Source of the DNA: Orbicella franksi
Taxonomy: Eukaryota
NCBI GenBank assembly: GCA_964199315.1
Contig: OZ116699.1
Location: 29,388,001-29,452,000, forward strand
Direction of reading: 5' to 3'
Length of the DNA: 64,000 nt
Positions 56,882-64,000 of this stretch are shown here, piece after piece; the first letter of the stretch is position 1; each line of letters opens with the position of its first letter. Below the pieces are notes generated by a model. That model made no database searches, was not told where the DNA came from, and saw nothing but the letters and a program-made list of their open reading frames with translations. Both the position numbers and the translations under genes were made by a program.

Positions 56882-59800
56882 TCACAGGTAATCATTTACG
56901 TTCATCGTAGCCCCAGTCTCCCGACTCATTTCATTGGTTATTGATGGTGCCGGAGTTTCTTGGTCAGCGGCTGTTGGTGGTGAGTCGTAAACCTGCGGTG
57001 TTGCCATGTCGGCGGGTGGACTGGGGTCTATAGAGTTTGAGGCCTGAGGTTCATCAGCTTGCTGTATGGTAGTTTGTGCAGCAGGTTGGTCTAGCGGAAT
57101 GAATAGTAACTTTTAAATCAATAGCCACTCAAAGCTGGTTTTAAGAGGGCACTGTTGGCAAAAACCAATATGTAGATTCGCTCTCAATTATGACAAAATA
57201 TTTACAAGGCTAAAAAATGTTTAAAAAGGTAAAACACCAAACGTTTTCGACGTAATCTCATCTTCAGGGTGGAAAAGCTGTCCGCCACTCGCATAATTGA
57301 TAACCGTTAGGTAATTCTCGATTGGAAGTTTCGCCATGTAACAGTGAATTTGTTTGTTTAAGCTAGGTTGCCATTGTTGGATCATTAGGCCTTCTAGGAT
57401 TCTTCGCTCGTGAAAAGATTGGGCGGTACGGAGTATGTGCCAGCTAAAGAAATGCAAAGGGCTCTCGCACGGGTGACGGGCAGGTTCAGAGGTTCTGAAA
57501 TGATGTTAGGGTCAGCAAACCCTTCATTCCCTCGGGCCTAAACTTCATAACCTACGAGACCGACCAACTGAATTCGACACCTTTACTCTAGCATATGTTA
57601 CTTGGCAACTCGGCGCAGTGAACACGAATTGTCACCCGCGGGTCATCTGAGTTTCTACAAATAACAGTGCCTGTGCCACAATTACTGAACCACTTATAAT
57701 CCCACAAATCAATTCAAACTATGAAAACTACCTAATTTTGTTTTTGAAGAAATTGGAAAAGAACAGGACCACTTGGAAGTATTGCTCGTTGATATTCATT
57801 TAAATTGTCGTTCGCACCTGGTAAAAGAAAAATTGGCTTTCTTCTTAATGGAGTTTCAACTTAATGTAAACTTGGTTCATTCTGTCCAGTCTTTTATCTC
57901 TCAATCAAATTACGTGACTGTTTTTCATTTTGTGCTTATTGTTGTTATTGCTTACTTTTTCGGCACCACCGTCATTTTGTCTTTTGAAGAAAATAAGAGT
58001 AAACGGCACAAGCTCTCTCGATGAACAGTTTACTCTTAGAGTAAATACCGAGTTAATAATATTGTTTAAATATCAAAAAACAAAATGGTTGAGTGATTTT
58101 AAAGTAATCGTTGGGTAAGTTCAGATTAAATGTCTTGAGATCAGAATCGGCCGGTAAATAAAGCCACCGATTATTGTCACATACCTCTCACTTTTCGGAG
58201 ACTAAATTTGCTGACAGCTTTCCTTAGCAGCTTACTCCAACCCTTTCTTCCTCGCATCCTAGCCTTTCCGTAACGAAGCCGGATTCGTCGAAGACGTCCG
58301 CGTAACACAGCACGCAGCTTATTACAGCAGTTCCTCACACGTCGCCACATTCGTCCGTAACGTAACTGCAAGGCTCCTCCTCTGGATGGCACATATTTCC
58401 AGCGCCCTCCAATGCGGATCCCGAATCGACGTCCTCGCAGCGTGACCCTTCTTCTCTTGCCCCGATATTTTATAGTCCAATATCCGCGCCGTTTCTTAAC
58501 GAGTCTCCACCTGCCTCCGTACCTGAGTCGCATCTTCACGTAGGTCTTTCTTCGTCTGAAACCTTTCCATTTCTTTCCGTACCAGATCGTTGGTCGTCCT
58601 CGTCGGAATCGGATTGGTCTTCCTTTTCGCCTATAGTGCACCATCAAGCGTCCTTTGCGAGGGTATATCCAGCGTAGTTTACCGCGGACATACATCTTCA
58701 AACGACGAACGATACGTCTAACTGGTCTCCAAGGCCTTCTGCCGTAGCGTACCCAGACTCCTCTGCTTCGTATTCTGTGAAATGAACAGGAAAACGGAGG
58801 AACTTCAAGGACTGCTTGGAAAAGGATAATTAAGCTGCCTATTGATTTTTTTCCATGCAGCAAATATTATGACAACAGCGTTAGATTCTCTTACCTAAGG
58901 CCATAGTACTTGGTACCAACACGGAACCTTAGTCGCCCACGCGTCCTTCGGACCCTTCTGAATCGTTTGCCATATTTGAAGACAATTCTACCATTACGCT
59001 GTCCGTATCGGCGTCGACGTCTGCGTCTCCTGCGTCTGATCCTTCGCCAGTACCGTCTTAACCTTTTCCGTCTTCGTCTTCTCCTTGCACGGCGACCACG
59101 GCGCGTCGAAGGACGTCTCCATCGTTTGTTGTAAAAGAATCTTAATTTACCATAGATGAATCGAATTGGTCTGGTTTTTCTGCGGTAAAGGACGCGAAGG
59201 GTCTTACCGACTCGCCTTAAGCGTCTGTACCGTCTCTTCAGAAGAACCCTCACTCTTCGTATTCCGACTCGGTACCATCTTCTTCCAAAGTAATAGCGGA
59301 CTATGCCCAGTCGGATGCTAACACAAAAGGGAAAATCAGGAACTGATCAGTTTTAAGCCCCTAGTCAGATGCTGTTGGGTCTGTAATTCCCAAGCTATTG
59401 TTGTTTGTGATGTCACTCTGGGGCGGATACAGGATTTCAGAGAAGGGAGTTGGAGATGTGGACCAGCGAAGGCGGTTCCCTTTAGAGGTAGCCGGGGGCA
59501 TGCATTCTCTCCCCACCCCCCCCCCCCCCTACCAAACAACAAAAAAATTTTAGAATTGAGGTCCTCGAAAATGGGATGTCTCATTTTGTTTTTTAATTTA
59601 GCGGGTTTGACCGAACCCCGAGGTCTTTTCATTGCACGCCCGAGAAACAAATAGAGTATGAGCTTGTGGTTTTGTAGATGTGACTAGTGCGTGAGTAATA
59701 AGCTGGCTTGATACATTTCAGAAGGTCTATTCAGATCCCTGATGCAGGATCACATAAGGGCTAGCCAATTCGTTTGAGCCTCAATTCGTTTGCAGTTTCG

Positions 59801-62800
59801 TCTTTCATAATAATTTTAAAAAGCAAATGCTTGAGAAAGGCAATAACAATGAGGACTACAACGTAAATAACTCGACTTAAACAAACAAAATAACTGCCGT
59901 AAATAAATCCCTATTCTTACCTTAAACTACAAGACCTTCGACCGTAGCGGAAGAAGAAGCGTCCACGCTTTTGGTAGACTTGTCTCCAACGTCTTCCAAC
60001 GTATATACGCATTACGCCGTAACGCCTTCCTCTATACCGTCTACCGCGTCGCCAAGGCCTTCTTTTGGGTCTTACACGTCTTCGCCGTCTTATAGTTATC
60101 CAGCGGCGTCCACTGAAAACAGCGATCCTTGTCCGCGTGATACGTATTTTTCTATATATTCTTCCAATACGAATCACGGGTTTTCTTCCGCGGATAGTAA
60201 TCCTTCTCCATTTTCTCGAAACGCGGGCAAAGAGGCGATACTTTTTCCGTGGAACGCGTCGCCAGGCTCTTCTAAAATAGTAATACAACCAGCCGCGTGT
60301 GAACCTGTTGTGAGGAAAAAAATCATAGTGTCAAAGATGAAGTGTGGAATTCATTGCAGCGGTNNNNNNNNNNNNNNNNNNNNNNNNNNNNNNNNNNNNN
60401 NNNNNNNNNNNNNNNNNNNNNNNNNNNNNNNNNNNNNNNNNNNNNNNNNNNNNNNNNNNNNNNNNNNNNNNNNNNNNNNNNNNNNNNNNNNNNNNNNNNN
60501 CAATCAATCAATCATAGATCAATCATCAATCACTCAATCGATCGATCAGCCAAAACCTTTATTATGTTAGCTAGCCAAGGAGAAACAAAGACGGGGTTCG
60601 TCGAAAAAATTTCTGTGAGAGAGCAACCCCGCCCCATACCCACAACACATGAACACTCCACAGTACCATTCAATGAAAAAAATACCCAGGAAAGAAGGGA
60701 GTTCCCTGAACCCCATGCAGCCCATCCCCCTTGAATCCACCCATACATAGCAGTAGTGAACAGAGTCAAAATAATGTTCAGGGTAATCTTGGAGAGTGCC
60801 CGGTCACATTTTTTTCAAAATTGCCTACGAATGAAATAACTTAATAATGAAAAAAAAAAACAGGAATCTATCCATATACAAAATCTTGTCCATTTACAAG
60901 TTGAATCAAGAAACATTAACAAAAAAGACATACTGTAGTATGTATCGTTTTTTTACATTATTTGAATGTCTATACACCAGCTGGGAGCATCGATTTCTAT
61001 ATTGCCAGTGCCACGGATGTTCTTTAAAGGAACAATGTCAAAATACTTGAAGTCATATTTCCGATCTACAAAATGACTTTAAATTACCTGAGAATGAAAG
61101 TTCTCTTGAGAAGTAATAATGTACAATGAGGTTCACGACTTACGAACAAAAAATCAAATTTCACCTTGTCTAGGAAGGATGTCTGATAAACCATTTTTCT
61201 TTTAGATGAACGCGTTCAGAAGAGTGAAGAGAATATTACCTGATTCTCCTTCGGCGTCCTCCAAGGCGGAATGTTAATCTACCTTTCCACCTGAAGATCT
61301 TCCTTGTCTTTCTGCGGTAATAGATCTTGAACGGGCTGTTGCGACGTCTGTATCGCCGGATACGTCTGATTCTGCGCCTCTTTCGTCTTCGATAGCGCCT
61401 TACGCGTCGCATCTTCCGCTTGAAGCGTCGGTATTTACGTCTGCGTATGCGGCGACCTTTTCGTTTACGTCTCGGTATGATTCGTCTCCACCTCCTTCTG
61501 ACACGATACACAGGTTTTCCGCGCCTGAACCCGATTCTGCGGTATTTTCGACCTACCCGGACACAGATCCTGCCTCTGTATCGTCTTGTAGGACGCCATC
61601 GGCGTCTGACGAGGAACTGAGGTCGACGTTTGATGGATCTCCACCCTCGTCTGCGCCGTAATAAGATCTTTCCTAATCTGGGTCGATATCTAGTAGATAA
61701 AGGAATGGCATTTATAAACACGTAATTATAACAACAGTGGCGTTTATTTGTACACGTTTCCAGGGCTTTTCTCTTTCGCTGCGCCCCGCCTCTGAGAGGT
61801 GAGAAGGTGGAACATTTCCCTGCAGGGTATAGTGCCCGTTAGTTCTTTGTTATTCGTCTAACAAAGCTATACCAAATCTGAGTACAGAAGTTATAAAGTG
61901 AAAAGCGAAGGAGGAATGTTTTTGATCTGTCATTGTACGTACTTAATTGACTGGTTTTTTTTTTCGTATCGGGCCGCAATTCAAACGTTTCCCTCCTTGC
62001 TAGTTGCAATATCAATATAATTTCTTTTGCATGGCTTTCCCGTATGTTGTTGTCTTTACGGATCAACAGAGAAATTATCCTTACCTCACAATTCTAAATC
62101 GACGTTTAAAACGCATCACAAGGCGCCTTCCTCGCCTGTAAATCTTTCTAAATCGCCTTCTAAACCATACACGCATGACGCAGCCACGTCTTACGCGCCT
62201 TCCTCTTCGCCTTCGCCGACGCCGTCGTCTCATTCTTCTCTTTCTCCGGCGTGATCTTCTTCGTCTTCGCCTTCGTCTTCTTCTTCGTATGGTTCTACGT
62301 GTCCTCGGTCTTCTCAGAAGCCCTTTGTATTTTATTCGGAATCTGCCGCGTACTATACGCACTGGCCACATTTTATTTCTGAATCGGATACGAGGTTTTC
62401 CGCGGTAATATCGCAGTAATCGCCAGCGCCGACCAAAGCGGAACTTTATTGGCCTTCTGCTCAACCATCGCCATCTCTTGCCATAGCGAATTCCAATCCT
62501 GGAATTGCGGTACCTAATAAATAAAGACGTAAGACGTCAACGGAAGAAGCATTTCGTAATGAATTCTGAAAGTGCCCTGACACTTTTGTGCTTGGACCCT
62601 CACCATTTCCGGGTAATTTTGCCCGTGTCCCGCAATTCGATTCAGTATGTTTGAGTAGATTTAACCTATTGTTGTCTGCCGTCGGCCTGTCGTCTGGAAA
62701 CTGCCTCGTAAGGTCAATGGAGTTCACTACTAGACTACAATTTTTCAATTTTTTAACAATTAAAAAAAATACCAAGACGTCTCAAACGCCATTAAGTGAC

Positions 62801-64000
62801 CTAGTTTGTACTAAACGCATATTTCACAAAAGCTATATAAATTACTTCAAAAGGGTGTGTTGTTATATATATTGATAGATTCTTGCATTGTTTCACTGTC
62901 TCCAATCTAATAAAAAAGACCAATCACCGTGGATTACTTTTTATTCTACTGACGTTTTTACTTTTGCTAATTTTCCTCTCCAATTATGACAAGTTAAATC
63001 ATTGTGATGTCATACCTTATTCTTCTCCATGCACCCCTGATTCGAGCTCTTAGGTATCTACCTCGGCGGTAAGCTGGGATCCACCTTCGGCCATATTTAA
63101 AATGAAGAACGTTGCGTCGTCTTATTCGTCGCTGACGGCGTCGGTATCGACGACGCCGACGTCTCACTCGCCGCCTTCGTCGTCGTCTTCGTCTCCGTCT
63201 CCATTTCTTTCGCCGTCTTGGTCGTCGTGGCTTTCTCCTGATTACTCTCCAGCGCCGACCGTAGCGTATCATGAGCCGTCCTCCCGTTAATCTGAACGGT
63301 CTGTACCGCCGTCTAAACCGAAGAACAAGCCTTCCACGACGTCTTACGATATAGCGCCAACCAAAACCCACGCGGACCTTGAAACGCCGTGTGATTCGAC
63401 GTATTATGCGGCTTTTTCCTTTGTACGTTACTCGGAAGTATCGTCCTCTAAGATATCTGATTGAAATTCAAATAAAATAGAGTCAGAACAGAACTTTCAA
63501 TATCCTGCTGTCCGACGTGGAGGACGCAAACACAACTCCCGGAGCTCGAATAAATTAGAATAAATTAAATATATAAATTCCAGCAACTGGCAGTCCGGAC
63601 GTACAATGCTTAAGTCCTGCAGTTCAAGTCATTTGCCATTTTGTCATTTTTCTGTGCGCTATCTCATTTCTACCTACTTTTACTTTAACGCAAGAAGTGA
63701 ATATACAAGGATGGCTAGAATGTTCACTAACCACAATCTAAAAATTATGTACACGAAGTTATTGTTTCTCCCCCTGAACAATTCTCTACGATATTTTTAA
63801 GTGGCATTTCCTTTGTTGTAAATATCATTTTTCTCACCGGAAGGTTATCCATCGACGATGGTAACGCATCCTGTATCCACCCCGCCACCTCACAATCGGT
63901 CTCCAACTTCTGCGGTAATAGAAAAGAATCATAGGCCGCCTGCGTCGGCGTATGTAGCGCCGTCTACGTCTTCGACGTCGTCGTTGTAATCGTCGTCGCC
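56882..64000 (-). CDS. Large Arg-rich modular repeat protein with an acidic C-terminal tail (5' end outside the window), >=1028 aa, >=8 exons
   Basis: Exons 63838->64000, 63016-63456, 62085-62513, 61240-61689, 59921-60304, 58895-59317, 58185-58774 and 56882-57090. All introns are GT-AG; the first six are phase 2 and the last is phase 1. 3089 nt join without a stop. An N-gap lies in one intron. Confidence 0.85.
57215..57480 (-). mobile_element. Penelope-like element remnant (GIY-YIG C-terminus + hammerhead-like motif)
   Basis: HFFSWHILRTAQSFHERRILEGLMIQQWQPSLNKQI resembles the end of PLE GIY-YIG domains. It is followed by CACC-CTGAAGA-...-GAAAACGTTT-GGTG at 57235-57271. Confidence 0.55.
60364..60500. 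other. Assembly gap (N run) next to a (CAAT)n/(ATCG)n microsatellite
   Basis: 137 N; the true gap size is unknown. Confidence 0.99.

What the first reader, a model, noticed from the sequence alone, without database searches (positions are those of the whole stretch)
56882..64000. Giant polycationic repeat protein: ~960 residues without a single Asp or Glu
Seen: seven exons translate to roughly 35-45% Arg (by eye), rich in Tyr/Trp/Phe/Ile/Val/Gly, with no acidic residue, spliced through canonical sites in one frame. It matches no family I know. Protamines are small and lack this hydrophobic periodicity, and SR/RGG proteins have different repeats. Hypotheses (inference): a secreted adhesive or structural polycation pairing with polyanions (acidic skeletal matrix proteins, cnidocyst poly-gamma-glutamate, mucus); a polyprotein processed at basic sites into Arg/Trp beta-hairpin antimicrobial or cell-penetrating peptides; or a nucleic-acid-condensing protein. 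This is the best candidate for an undescribed system in the window.
Basis: partly seen in the sequence, partly recalled or inferred. Interest (0 to 1): 0.9.

Follow-up and report, generated by a model that had tools for sequence, protein, structure and literature searches.

The report
Giant arginine-rich coral repeat protein gene
This stretch is the last third of a real, spliced and expressed stony-coral gene for a protein of at least about 3,200 to 3,500 residues that is almost half arginine with virtually no acidic residues. It belongs to a coral-only family that nobody has described, and its job is unknown.

Summary
On the minus strand, seven phase-2 exons (63838-64000+, 63016-63456, 62085-62513, 61240-61689, 59921-60304, 58895-59317, 58185-58774) splice in one frame. 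Together they give 959 residues with 41.1% Arg, 7% Lys and no Asp or Glu (net +461).

RNA-seq reads and transcript contigs confirm every junction with GT..AG ends. The N gap lies inside an intron that reads splice across, so it breaks no exon.

An eighth exon (56882-57090) adds a conserved 69-residue acidic tail, followed by a stop, an ATTAAA signal and a poly(A) site.

The window holds only the 3' part. A 10.5-kb spliced transcript contig, and 20 or more such exons in a close relative, imply at least about 3,200 to 3,500 residues.

Each exon is one module: four 18-residue beta-hairpin units, a poly-Arg tract, then two more hairpins. AlphaFold2 gives pLDDT 72-85.

Orthologues occur in Acropora, Montipora and Orbicella, filed as truncated "uncharacterized protein" models. 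dN/dS is 0.37. There is no Pfam, PDB or literature match.

The function is inferred only. Most likely it is a multivalent polycationic scaffold that condenses polyanions. The N-terminus, and so whether it is secreted, remains unresolved.

The parts
63838..64000 (-). Exon G, partial because it runs off the window. It codes the end of a poly-Arg tract plus two hairpins (...RWRGGYRMRYHRRWITFR).
   Evidence: Donor CG|GTGAGA at 63838. The joint 63456|63838 is seen in 6 reads and an X1 contig. The full exon is visible in the close relative, L009:8080-8607.
63016..63456 (-). Exon F, one module of 147 residues: 4 hairpin units, a polyArg tract, 2 hairpin units.
   Evidence: Joints 62510/62513|63013/63016 and 63456|63838 with CT..AC ends. 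Translation.
62085..62513 (-). Exon E, one module of 143 residues, with a single Cys directly after the polyArg tract (GCVMRVWF).
   Evidence: Joints. The AlphaFold2 model has mean pLDDT 85: 8 strands, a helix over residues 72-108, then 4 strands.
61240..61689 (-). Exon D, one module of 150 residues.
   Evidence: Joints 61689|62085 and 60302(+2)|61238(+2).
60364..60500 (.). Assembly gap (N run), lying inside intron 60305-61239.
   Evidence: It is the only N run in the window. Thirteen X24 reads and an X1 contig splice 61240 to 60304 with nothing in between (tables 5 and 5c).
59921..60304 (-). Exon C, a module of 128 residues with a short basic linker instead of a long polyArg tract.
   Evidence: Joints.
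58895..59317 (-). Exon B, one module of 141 residues.
   Evidence: Joints 58774|58895 and 59317|59921 in four runs.
58185..58774 (-). Exon A, the last Arg-rich exon (196 whole codons). It has no polyArg tract and is the best-conserved part of the protein.
   Evidence: Alignment A1 of 26 sequences has 15 invariant columns, including W69, W99, L112-R113-G114, W143 and C149-C150. The AlphaFold2 model is an all-beta meander of about 20 strands, with pLDDT 82-90 over residues 80-180.
58324..58329 (-). Invariant Cys-Cys pair within the motif WRRVRNCCNKLRAVLRG.
   Evidence: Invariant in all 26 aligned sequences. Coordinates checked by translation.
56882..57090 (-). Terminal coding exon. It codes a 69-residue Pro/Ala/Thr/Gln/Asp-rich acidic tail (net -10) ending ...NVNDYL, followed by the stop codon at 56882-56884.
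   Evidence: The joint 57090|58185 (CT..AC) is seen in 14 X24 reads and in X2, X5 and X8 contigs. The same junction and tail appear in transcript-derived ORFs P0005, P0016, P0019 and P0039 and in NCBI models of Acropora and Montipora.
56548..56881 (-). 3' UTR, with an ATTAAA signal at 56555-56560 and a poly(A) addition site near 56540-56548.
   Evidence: The X8 contig ends at 56540 with 16 extra T that are not in the genome, and the X5 contig ends at 56563. The hexamer was read.

Best explanation
What it is (shown). This is the 3' third of one very large stony-coral gene. Each symmetrical phase-2 exon codes one module of about 130-200 residues (about 250 in one Acropora-like exon). A module has about four 18-residue beta-hairpin units, then a poly-Arg tract of about 30-80 residues, then two more hairpin units. 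A non-repetitive, strongly conserved last Arg-rich module carries an invariant Cys-Cys. A short conserved acidic tail follows. The whole protein has at least about 3,200-3,500 residues and is 41-47% Arg with almost no Asp or Glu.

How it most likely works (inferred). The intact protein is a multivalent polycationic scaffold. The rigid beta-hairpin blocks display arginine and aromatic side chains, and the poly-Arg tracts act as flexible high-charge stickers. One molecule could therefore bind and cross-link many polyanionic partners into a dense gel or coacervate. The most plausible partners are acidic skeletal-matrix proteins, sulfated glycans of mucus, or carbonate and phosphate-rich phases, in a secretory or extracellular compartment peculiar to stony corals. 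The acidic tail would serve sorting or self-masking. The place of action and the partner have not been shown.
For: Gene, splicing, strand and 3' end:
- Seven introns with GT..AG ends, a poly(A) tail and an ATTAAA signal.

Size:
- The X8 transcript contig is 10,504 nt, with 9,197 nt upstream of exon C.
- A transcript-derived ORF of 2,185 residues exists in the Montipora cluster.
- At least 20 Arg-rich exons were seen in the close relative (L008-L011). Seventeen of them give 2,688 residues with R 47% and D+E = 2. With three more exons the total is about 3,200 residues.
- About 26 such exons span about 47 kb in an Acropora-like contig.

Protein-level selection:
- Against the about-90%-identical relative, dN/dS is 0.37, with dS 0.143, close to intron divergence of 0.12-0.17.
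- There are no stops, and the only indel is 3 nt long.
- Third codon positions change about twice as often as first and second positions.
- All six Arg codons are used.

Architecture:
- The lag-18 autocorrelation of hydrophobic residues has z = 8.2 against shuffles.
- Modules from 35 exons align in register.
- AlphaFold2 gives beta-meander - helix - beta-meander with pLDDT 85 for a module, and an all-beta meander with pLDDT 72 for the last exon.

Intact-protein function rather than peptide release:
- A unique conserved C-terminal module and a conserved tail are present.

Restriction to stony corals:
- There were 9 hits among 1.84 billion representative proteins.
- Named members come from Acropora, Montipora and Orbicella.

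Weak hint of secretion:
- An Acropora-like contig has a short hydrophobic candidate first exon, MKRWVLLWLFFP, in the right phase, 530 nt upstream of the 5'-most Arg-rich exon.
Against: - No signal peptide is verified. The 5' end is outside the window and was not reached in the close relative. The Acropora candidate first exon rests on sequence alone, and the only second copy (L007) is too similar to test conservation.
- There are 91 R-x-[KR]-R motifs in 959 residues. Furin-type proteases of the secretory pathway would be expected to cut an exposed chain many times.
- Strict hydrophobic/cationic alternation is weak (beta hydrophobic moment z about 2), so a clean two-faced sheet is not demonstrated.
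- There is no protein-level, cell-type or partner evidence.
- AlphaFold2's confident poly-Arg helix may be a low-complexity artefact.
Confidence: 0.4

Rival explanations
1. Intracellular nucleic-acid binder or condenser. Without a signal peptide the protein would stay in the cytosol or nucleus. Its poly-Arg tracts would act as nuclear or nucleolar targeting signals and as arginine-rich RNA/DNA-binding motifs. The giant chain would then compact RNA or chromatin, for example in germ cells or in a ribonucleoprotein granule.
For: - No verified signal peptide.
- Poly-Arg tracts are predicted as long helices, like arginine-rich RNA-binding motifs.
- Extreme positive charge.
- No N-glycosylation sequons in 1,028 residues.
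- Expression looks conditional: 302 reads in X24 against 0-1 in X22/X23 of the same species label. It is unproven that the organism's RNA is present in X22/X23.
Against: - Identified so far only in stony corals, whereas chromatin or RNA compaction is universal.
- It is present in poly(A) RNA of colony samples from several studies, not only in one special sample.
- Free Arg-rich polymers of this kind are known to be toxic to nucleoli and translation (established knowledge on C9orf72 poly-GR/PR).
- The Met codons near the start of the 5'-most Arg-rich exon are not conserved between close species. This argues that translation starts in a further upstream exon.
Confidence: 0.25
2. Polyprotein precursor. 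The chain enters the secretory pathway and is cut at its many basic sites. Carboxypeptidases trim the poly-Arg linkers. Dozens of short Arg/Trp/Tyr-rich hairpin peptides are released, with antimicrobial or cell-penetrating activity.
For: - 91 furin-like and 210 dibasic sites in 959 residues.
- Units of 18 residues are the size of known Arg-rich hairpin peptides.
- Unchecked scan notes report other secreted Arg-rich peptide genes in this genome.
Against: - No regular spacer/cleavage-site/peptide layout and no acidic pro-pieces between units.
- Hairpins lack the disulfide pairs of tachyplesin- or protegrin-type peptides: 5 Cys in 959 residues.
- Basic residues lie inside the strands, so cutting at them would leave mostly fragments of 1-8 residues.
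- What is conserved is the module register, a unique last module and a tail, which points to a function of the whole chain.
- No known antimicrobial precursor approaches 3,000 residues (my own knowledge).
Confidence: 0.15
3. Transcribed and spliced, but with no function for the protein: a runaway exon-duplication array whose open frame persists mainly because Arg-codon-rich sequence rarely mutates to stop codons.
For: - Two exons taken singly have dN/dS near 1 (F 1.02, D 0.82).
- Poly-Arg tract lengths vary freely between modules and species.
- Long poly-Arg runs are expected to stall ribosomes (established knowledge).
Against: - Pooled dN/dS is 0.37 with a third-position excess.
- Exon lengths and phases are kept between species.
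- The frame is open over at least 2,185 codons in Montipora and about 26 exons in Acropora. The same invariant residues occur in acroporids (Acropora, Montipora) and in Orbicella, which belong to the two major stony-coral clades, complex and robust (clade assignment from my own knowledge).
- CGA and AGA, which are one step from TGA, make up half of the Arg codons, yet no stop has arisen.
Confidence: 0.05

Closest known systems
Protamines and protamine-like sperm nuclear basic proteins
   Same: Very high arginine content with poly-Arg clusters and almost no acidic residues. Expected to bind polyanions tightly.
   Different: Protamines are tens to a few hundred residues, lack an 18-residue hydrophobic/aromatic periodicity and lack predicted beta-hairpin modules. 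This protein is at least ten times larger, is modular with one module per exon, and has a conserved acidic tail. No sequence similarity was found.
Arg-rich beta-hairpin and Trp/Arg-rich antimicrobial peptides (tachyplesin, polyphemusin, protegrin, arenicin, indolicidin, lactoferricin)
   Same: Units of about 18 residues mixing Arg with Trp, Tyr, Phe, Ile and Val, predicted to form hairpins.
   Different: Those peptides are single hairpins held by disulfides, made from small precursors with a signal peptide and usually an anionic pro-piece. Here there are more than 100 hairpins in one chain, almost no Cys, and no spacer/cleavage layout.
Polycationic partners in biological complex coacervates and biominerals (sandcastle-worm cement Pc proteins, mussel foot proteins, diatom silaffins, Lys-rich mollusc shell matrix proteins)
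   Same: Secreted, repetitive, strongly basic proteins rich in Gly and Tyr that work by pairing with polyanions. This is the mechanism I consider most likely here.
   Different: Those are Lys- or His-based, much smaller and often heavily modified. None has poly-Arg tracts or this repeat. Secretion is unproven here. This is a resemblance in mode of action only, recalled from my own knowledge and not tested.
Profilaggrin
   Same: A giant basic protein built of many tandem units.
   Different: Profilaggrin has an S100 N-terminal domain, is coded by essentially one large exon, is His/Ser/Gly/Arg-rich with acidic residues, and is processed into units at linker peptides. None of these features is seen here.
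Beta-hairpin repeat solenoids (choline-binding / cell-wall-binding repeats PF01473, clostridial CROP repeats, glucan-binding YG repeats) and the single-layer beta-sheet of OspA
   Same: Repeats of about 18-20 residues with conserved Gly and aromatic positions forming serial hairpins. These appear among the weak Foldseek hits.
   Different: TM-scores are at most 0.22 and E-values at least 0.005. There is no Pfam match even at E = 1. The composition is entirely different.
C9orf72 poly-GR / poly-PR dipeptide repeat proteins
   Same: Long arginine-rich polymers that phase-separate with RNA and acidic proteins.
   Different: Those are pathological products of repeat-associated translation, without folded units. 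This is a conserved, spliced gene under purifying selection.

Membership tests
Protamine / sperm nuclear basic protein | Small size (tens to a few hundred residues) | tested here: not met
   There are 1,028 residues in the window alone. The full protein has at least 2,185 to about 3,500 residues.
Protamine / sperm nuclear basic protein | Testis- or sperm-specific expression and DNA binding | not testable with these tools
   Run and sample identities are coded. The transcript is found in poly(A) RNA of colony or metatranscriptome samples from several studies.
Disulfide-stabilised Arg-rich beta-hairpin antimicrobial peptide precursors | Cys pairs bridging each hairpin | tested here: not met
   Only 5 Cys in 959 residues, at positions 312, 386, 619, 912 and 913.
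Disulfide-stabilised Arg-rich beta-hairpin antimicrobial peptide precursors | N-terminal signal peptide followed by a pro-piece | not testable with these tools
The only lead is an unverified candidate exon in an Acropora-like contig.
SR / RGG RNA-binding proteins | Runs of RS dipeptides or RGG boxes, usually with an RRM domain | tested here: not met
   2 RGG and 12 RS/SR in 959 residues. No RRM or any other Pfam domain.
Cell-wall / choline-binding repeat (PF01473) and related hairpin solenoids | Match to the family profile | tested here: not met
   No Pfam family at E up to 1 except a chance Med23 hit of 9 bits. Foldseek TM is at most 0.22 and VIA Z at most 3.4.
RTX nonapeptide beta-roll (9/18-residue periodicity) | GGxGxDxUx calcium-binding nonapeptide | tested here: not met
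   No Asp at all in the repeats and no Pfam hit. Only the 9/18 period is shared.
Profilaggrin-type (S100-fused) polyprotein | Tandem units in one large exon, separated by linker cleavage peptides | tested here: not met
   One module per exon, with introns confirmed by RNA. No recurrent linker peptide in the module alignment.
The coral orphan family itself (XP_015755449.1, XP_044172517.1, XP_067021859.1, XP_068743066.1, XP_020610765.1) | Last Arg-rich module with the invariant W..LRG..W..CC..L..G pattern, joined to an acidic tail containing DSPPTAADQE...SITNEMS | tested here: met
   47-93% identity to the full-length orthologues and 38-39% to the two weak, unplaced hits, with 15 invariant columns in A1. 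The tail and the junction are shared with P0005, P0016, P0019, P0039 and the NCBI models.

The most novel reading that the evidence does not exclude
Stony corals make a secreted protein of several thousand residues carrying well over a thousand net positive charges. It would be the so-far invisible cationic counterpart of the acidic skeletal matrix (or of another coral-specific polyanion), driving coacervate-like condensation during skeleton or adhesive formation. It would have escaped every skeletal and tissue proteome because trypsin cuts it into fragments of mostly 1-8 residues, and escaped gene annotation because its repeats break gene models.
Probability: 0.2. Interest if true: 0.9.

Novelty: categorically new. 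Interest (0 to 1): 0.82.

Why it matters
To my knowledge, no characterised protein of any organism combines this size, about 45% arginine, near-total lack of acidic residues and a folded hairpin-repeat design.

It is conserved across both major stony-coral clades, yet it exists in databases only as truncated "uncharacterized protein" models.

If it is secreted, it gives a concrete and testable candidate for a missing cationic component in coral calcification, adhesion or mucus. It would also explain why standard tryptic proteomics never saw it.

If it is intracellular, it shows that animal cells can make and tolerate a poly-Arg-rich polymer of a kind that is toxic in human disease. Either way, translating 20 or more poly-Arg tracts in one chain is a natural test case for ribosome stalling and quality control.

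The 18-residue units and the poly-Arg modules are also ready-made material for work on coacervates, antimicrobial peptides and cell-penetrating peptides.

Tried and rejected
- **Plus-strand reading.** The plus strand also has open Ser/Pro/Asp-rich frames of up to 214 codons. I rejected this reading because all introns have GT..AG ends on the minus strand, the poly(A) tail is on the minus strand, and only the Arg frame stays open after splicing.
- **An exon hidden in the N gap.** Rejected, because reads splice straight across that intron.
- **Family searches.** Pfam, ESM Atlas features, Foldseek against PDB and AFDB clusters and VIA-align wide gave nothing beyond the protein's own orthologue, A0A3M6UD74 (57% identity).
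- **Finding the N-terminus.**
  - I walked upstream through an Acropora-like contig (L001, L003-L006) and through the close relative (L008-L011) until the look-up cap.
  - The close relative still showed Arg-rich exons at the last locus.
  - The Acropora-like contig gave a 5'-most Arg-rich exon and one signal-like candidate first exon. L007 was too similar to test its conservation, and P0026's contig returned no DNA.
  - Two further homology searches for transcript-derived N-termini were swamped by poly-Arg words or returned only genomic ORFs.
  - Cluster listings gave no full-length model.
- **Literature.** Seven searches, by composition, tissue terms and all accession or LOC numbers, returned nothing relevant.
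- **A strictly two-faced amphipathic sheet.** Only weak support (z about 2), so I do not claim it.
- **Expression level.** I do not rank it: the runs were selected for holding this gene, and it was not shown that the coral's RNA is present in X22/X23.
Full report
**1. The observation**

Reading 56500-64000 and listing stop-to-stop frames shows seven long open frames on the minus strand, with 26-50% Arg and at most one acidic residue each. The one or two acidic residues fall in the intronic read-through, outside the exons.

Their ends carry canonical sites, a polypyrimidine tract with AG upstream and AG|GTAAG-type donors downstream. Every exon starts with the third base of a codon and ends with two bases of the next codon. 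All seven exons start in that same phase, and all but the last, exon A, also end in it, so those exons can be joined, duplicated or skipped without changing frame.

Joining them gives 959 residues with R 41.1%, K 7.0%, G 8.0%, Y 6.7%, I 6.5%, V 5.5%, L 5.1%, F 4.2% and W 3.8%. There is no Asp and no Glu, and the net charge is +461. All six Arg codons are used (AGA 109, CGA 90, CGC 64, CGT 50, AGG 50, CGG 31). This is therefore not a simple DNA repeat, and Tandem Repeats Finder finds only short arrays inside the poly-Arg tracts. No other Arg-rich frame exists elsewhere in the window.

**2. Transcription, splicing, strand and the gap**

Many RNA runs from corals hold this sequence. Laying raw poly(A) reads (X24) and transcript contigs (X1) on 58001-64000 gave depth over the predicted exons only.

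Six joints were seen, each with CT..AC on the + strand, which is GT..AG on the minus strand. After the tool's stated offsets the introns are:
- 58775-58894
- 59318-59920
- 60305-61239
- 61690-62084
- 62514-63015
- 63457-63837

The assembly gap at 60364-60500 lies inside intron 60305-61239. Thirteen reads and a contig join the two flanking exons directly and in frame, with no extra letters. That answers the question the scan's program asked to be tested first. I did not try to read or fill the gap.

A second lay confirmed a seventh intron, 57091-58184, in 14 reads and in contigs of three further runs. It also located the 3' end: a contig ends near 56540 with 16 non-genomic T (a poly(A) tail on the minus strand), 10-15 nt after an ATTAAA hexamer at 56555-56560.

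In the spliced mRNA only the Arg frame is open: 1,028 codons and then one stop. The other five frames have 21-51 stops each.

**3. The terminal exon**

Exon A ends in phase 1 at AGAG|GTATGT. It joins 57090 to give ...KVR-DQPAAQTTIQQADEPQASNSIDPSPPADMATPQVYDSPPTAADQETPAPSITNEMSRETGATMNVNDYL-stop.

This tail has 69 residues and net charge -10. The phrase "without a single Asp or Glu" is therefore true for the seven Arg-rich exons, but not for the whole range given in the finding.

**4. The gene is much larger than the window**

- One spliced transcript contig of run X8 is 10,504 nt long and places 9,197 nt upstream of exon C.
- A transcript-derived ORF in the Montipora cluster has 2,185 residues, including the tail.
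- I walked a collinear contig of a close relative, about 90% identical at nucleotide level (L008-L011).
- Seventeen of these exons total 2,688 residues with R 47.1%, K 7.7% and only one Asp and one Glu. With three more exons the minimum is about 3,200 residues.
- An Acropora-like contig (L001, L003-L006) has about 26 such exons over about 47 kb.

**5. Internal design**

Hydrophobic residues, Gly and basic residues all show their strongest autocorrelation at lag 18, with harmonics at 36 and 9. For the hydrophobic mask, z = 8.2 against 2,000 shuffles. This independently confirms an earlier scan note (s1-207820).

Written in rows of 18, a typical exon is four units, about two units' worth of poly-Arg, and two more units. 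Thirty-five module exons from four loci sets align in register. The conserved positions are:
- an N-terminal aromatic-R-x-G;
- RRW/RW turns;
- the poly-Arg block of very variable length;
- a post-tract motif, [C/S]V[ML]R[FV]xY..RWR.VYRRGR.LxFR.

AlphaFold2 was run with that alignment on exon E. It gives mean pLDDT 85: eight short strands, a 37-residue helix over the poly-Arg tract, then four strands. For exon A, with 26 orthologues, it gives an all-beta meander of about 20 strands, with pLDDT 82-90 over residues 80-180. The helix may be a low-complexity artefact.

A clean alternation of cationic and hydrophobic faces is only weakly supported (z about 2).

**6. Conservation and selection**

- The last Arg-rich exon found 19 relatives at 48-93% identity in the 5.8-billion-protein collection.
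- It found only 9 hits among 1.84 billion cluster representatives by full HMMER.
- Cluster listings name XP_015755449.1 (Acropora digitifera), XP_044172517.1 (A. millepora), XP_067021859.1 (A. muricata), XP_068743066.1 (Montipora capricornis, 987 aa) and XP_020610765.1/XP_020610766.1 (Orbicella faveolata). All are "uncharacterized protein" and all are truncated models.
- An AlphaFold DB cluster representative, A0A3M6UD74 (889 aa), is 57% identical. From memory its accession range belongs to Pocillopora damicornis, which I could not check.
- The family thus spans both the complex and the robust stony-coral clades.
- Alignment A1 has 15 invariant columns, including a Cys-Cys pair.
- The acidic tail is conserved too: DSPPTAADQE..P.SITNEMS....ATM...D.L.
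- Against L008, pooled dN/dS is 0.37 (dS 0.143, dN 0.052), and intron divergence is 0.12-0.17. No stop occurs and the only indel is 3 nt. Substitutions per site are 0.060, 0.052 and 0.100 at codon positions 1, 2 and 3.

The protein frame is under purifying selection, moderately relaxed as is usual for repeat proteins.

**7. Comparison with known things**

- No Pfam family matched, and no ESM Atlas neighbour scored above 0.52.
- Foldseek against the PDB gave no match with E at or below 0.001. TM was at most 0.22, and the weak matches were fascin, OspA and hairpin-repeat proteins.
- VIA-align gave Z of at most 3.4.
- Seven literature searches found nothing on this protein or its accession numbers.
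- It fails the defining features of protamines (size), SR/RGG proteins (2 RGG, 12 RS/SR), disulfide-braced hairpin peptides (5 Cys in 959 residues), RTX rolls (no Asp) and profilaggrin (one module per exon).

**8. Mechanism**

The shown facts are these:
- a very long chain of small beta-hairpin blocks alternating with poly-Arg tracts;
- a unique conserved C-terminal block with Cys-Cys, and one conserved Cys after the tract in many upstream modules;
- a short conserved acidic tail;
- a family identified so far only in stony corals.

From these I infer a multivalent polycation that acts as an intact scaffold, binding and cross-linking polyanions. The coral-only range points to a coral-specific extracellular or granular polyanion, namely the acidic skeletal matrix or sulfated glycans. 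I give this reading a probability of 0.4.

The main rival, at 0.25, is an intracellular nucleic-acid binder. It cannot be excluded because the N-terminus is unknown. The only hint of secretion is an unverified 12-residue hydrophobic candidate first exon in the Acropora-like contig. It is in the right phase, 530 nt upstream of the 5'-most Arg-rich exon. In addition, the Met codons inside that exon are not conserved between close species, so translation probably starts further upstream.

A peptide polyprotein (0.15) fits the 91 furin-like sites. It does not fit the absence of spacers, the internal position of the basic residues, or the conserved unique end.

A functionless open frame (0.05) is contradicted by the selection data.

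**9. Leads from earlier scan notes (unchecked)**

The same genome is said to hold genes with "globular domains resurfaced with arginine" (s1-243835) and "arginine-saturated versions of ordinary domains" (s1-231923). It is also said to hold small secreted Arg-rich peptide genes (s1-204040, s1-196253). If real, they would suggest a wider set of polycationic products in this coral. I did not test them and do not count them as support.

**10. Verdict**

- The function is open.
- The family is recorded in databases only as fragments without a name.
- I rate it as a new kind of protein with high interest. The mechanism is an inference.

Noticed in passing
window 55000-56610: Just downstream of the gene's poly(A) site lies a multi-copy, very highly represented transcribed element. 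Depth is 10-100 times that of the gene, most reads are only 95-99% alike with dozens of fixed differences, and many different loose ends occur at 56379, 56436 and 56467-56472. It looks like an expressed repeat or transposon fragment. A 126-codon ORF (56258-56638, +) lies in it.
   Followed up: no
window 62142-62405 and 61403-61552; L003:402-584 and 2134-2391; L011:9176-9331: The shifted frames of the poly-Arg tracts (CGN/AGR runs) read as Glu/Asp/Gly-rich or Lys/Thr/Glu-rich open frames of 50-110 codons on the same strand, and as Leu/Arg-rich frames on the opposite strand. They are confined to the tracts and look like a by-product of composition, not like overlapping genes.
   Followed up: partly
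window 59417-59447 (intron between exons B and C): A 30-nt island is covered by six X24 reads, with unrelated sequence on both sides and a T>A at 59435. It probably matches a short shared element of another transcript.
   Followed up: no
window 62257-62286 and 59068: Transcript contigs and a few reads break off, with different continuations, inside the poly-Arg coding tracts. This is consistent with allelic or between-colony length variation of the tracts, or with assembler breaks in low-complexity sequence.
   Followed up: no
L008:8594-9813 and L009:15400-20000: In the close relative, the 120-nt intron between exons B and A of the window carries a 1.2-kb insertion. A roughly 5-kb stretch without Arg-rich frames, with several ordinary ORFs, sits in an upstream intron and is possibly a mobile element.
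   Followed up: no
L004:1-2500 (= L005:8000-10400): A short Cys/Lys-rich ORF family (…KNERCTCKVCKTTVFHCQMCEFV…) recurs on both strands, in an intron of the Acropora-like gene between two Arg-rich exons. It is probably a repeat element.
   Followed up: no
P0021 and P0022: Two transcript-derived ORFs of 357 and 389 residues are richer in Lys. They are about 40% identical to exon A and keep the NCC motif, but they end in another poly-Arg stretch instead of the acidic tail. They may be a paralogue or come from a more distant hexacoral. Their source organism could not be determined.
   Followed up: partly
I saw them only in the ORF list.
   Followed up: no
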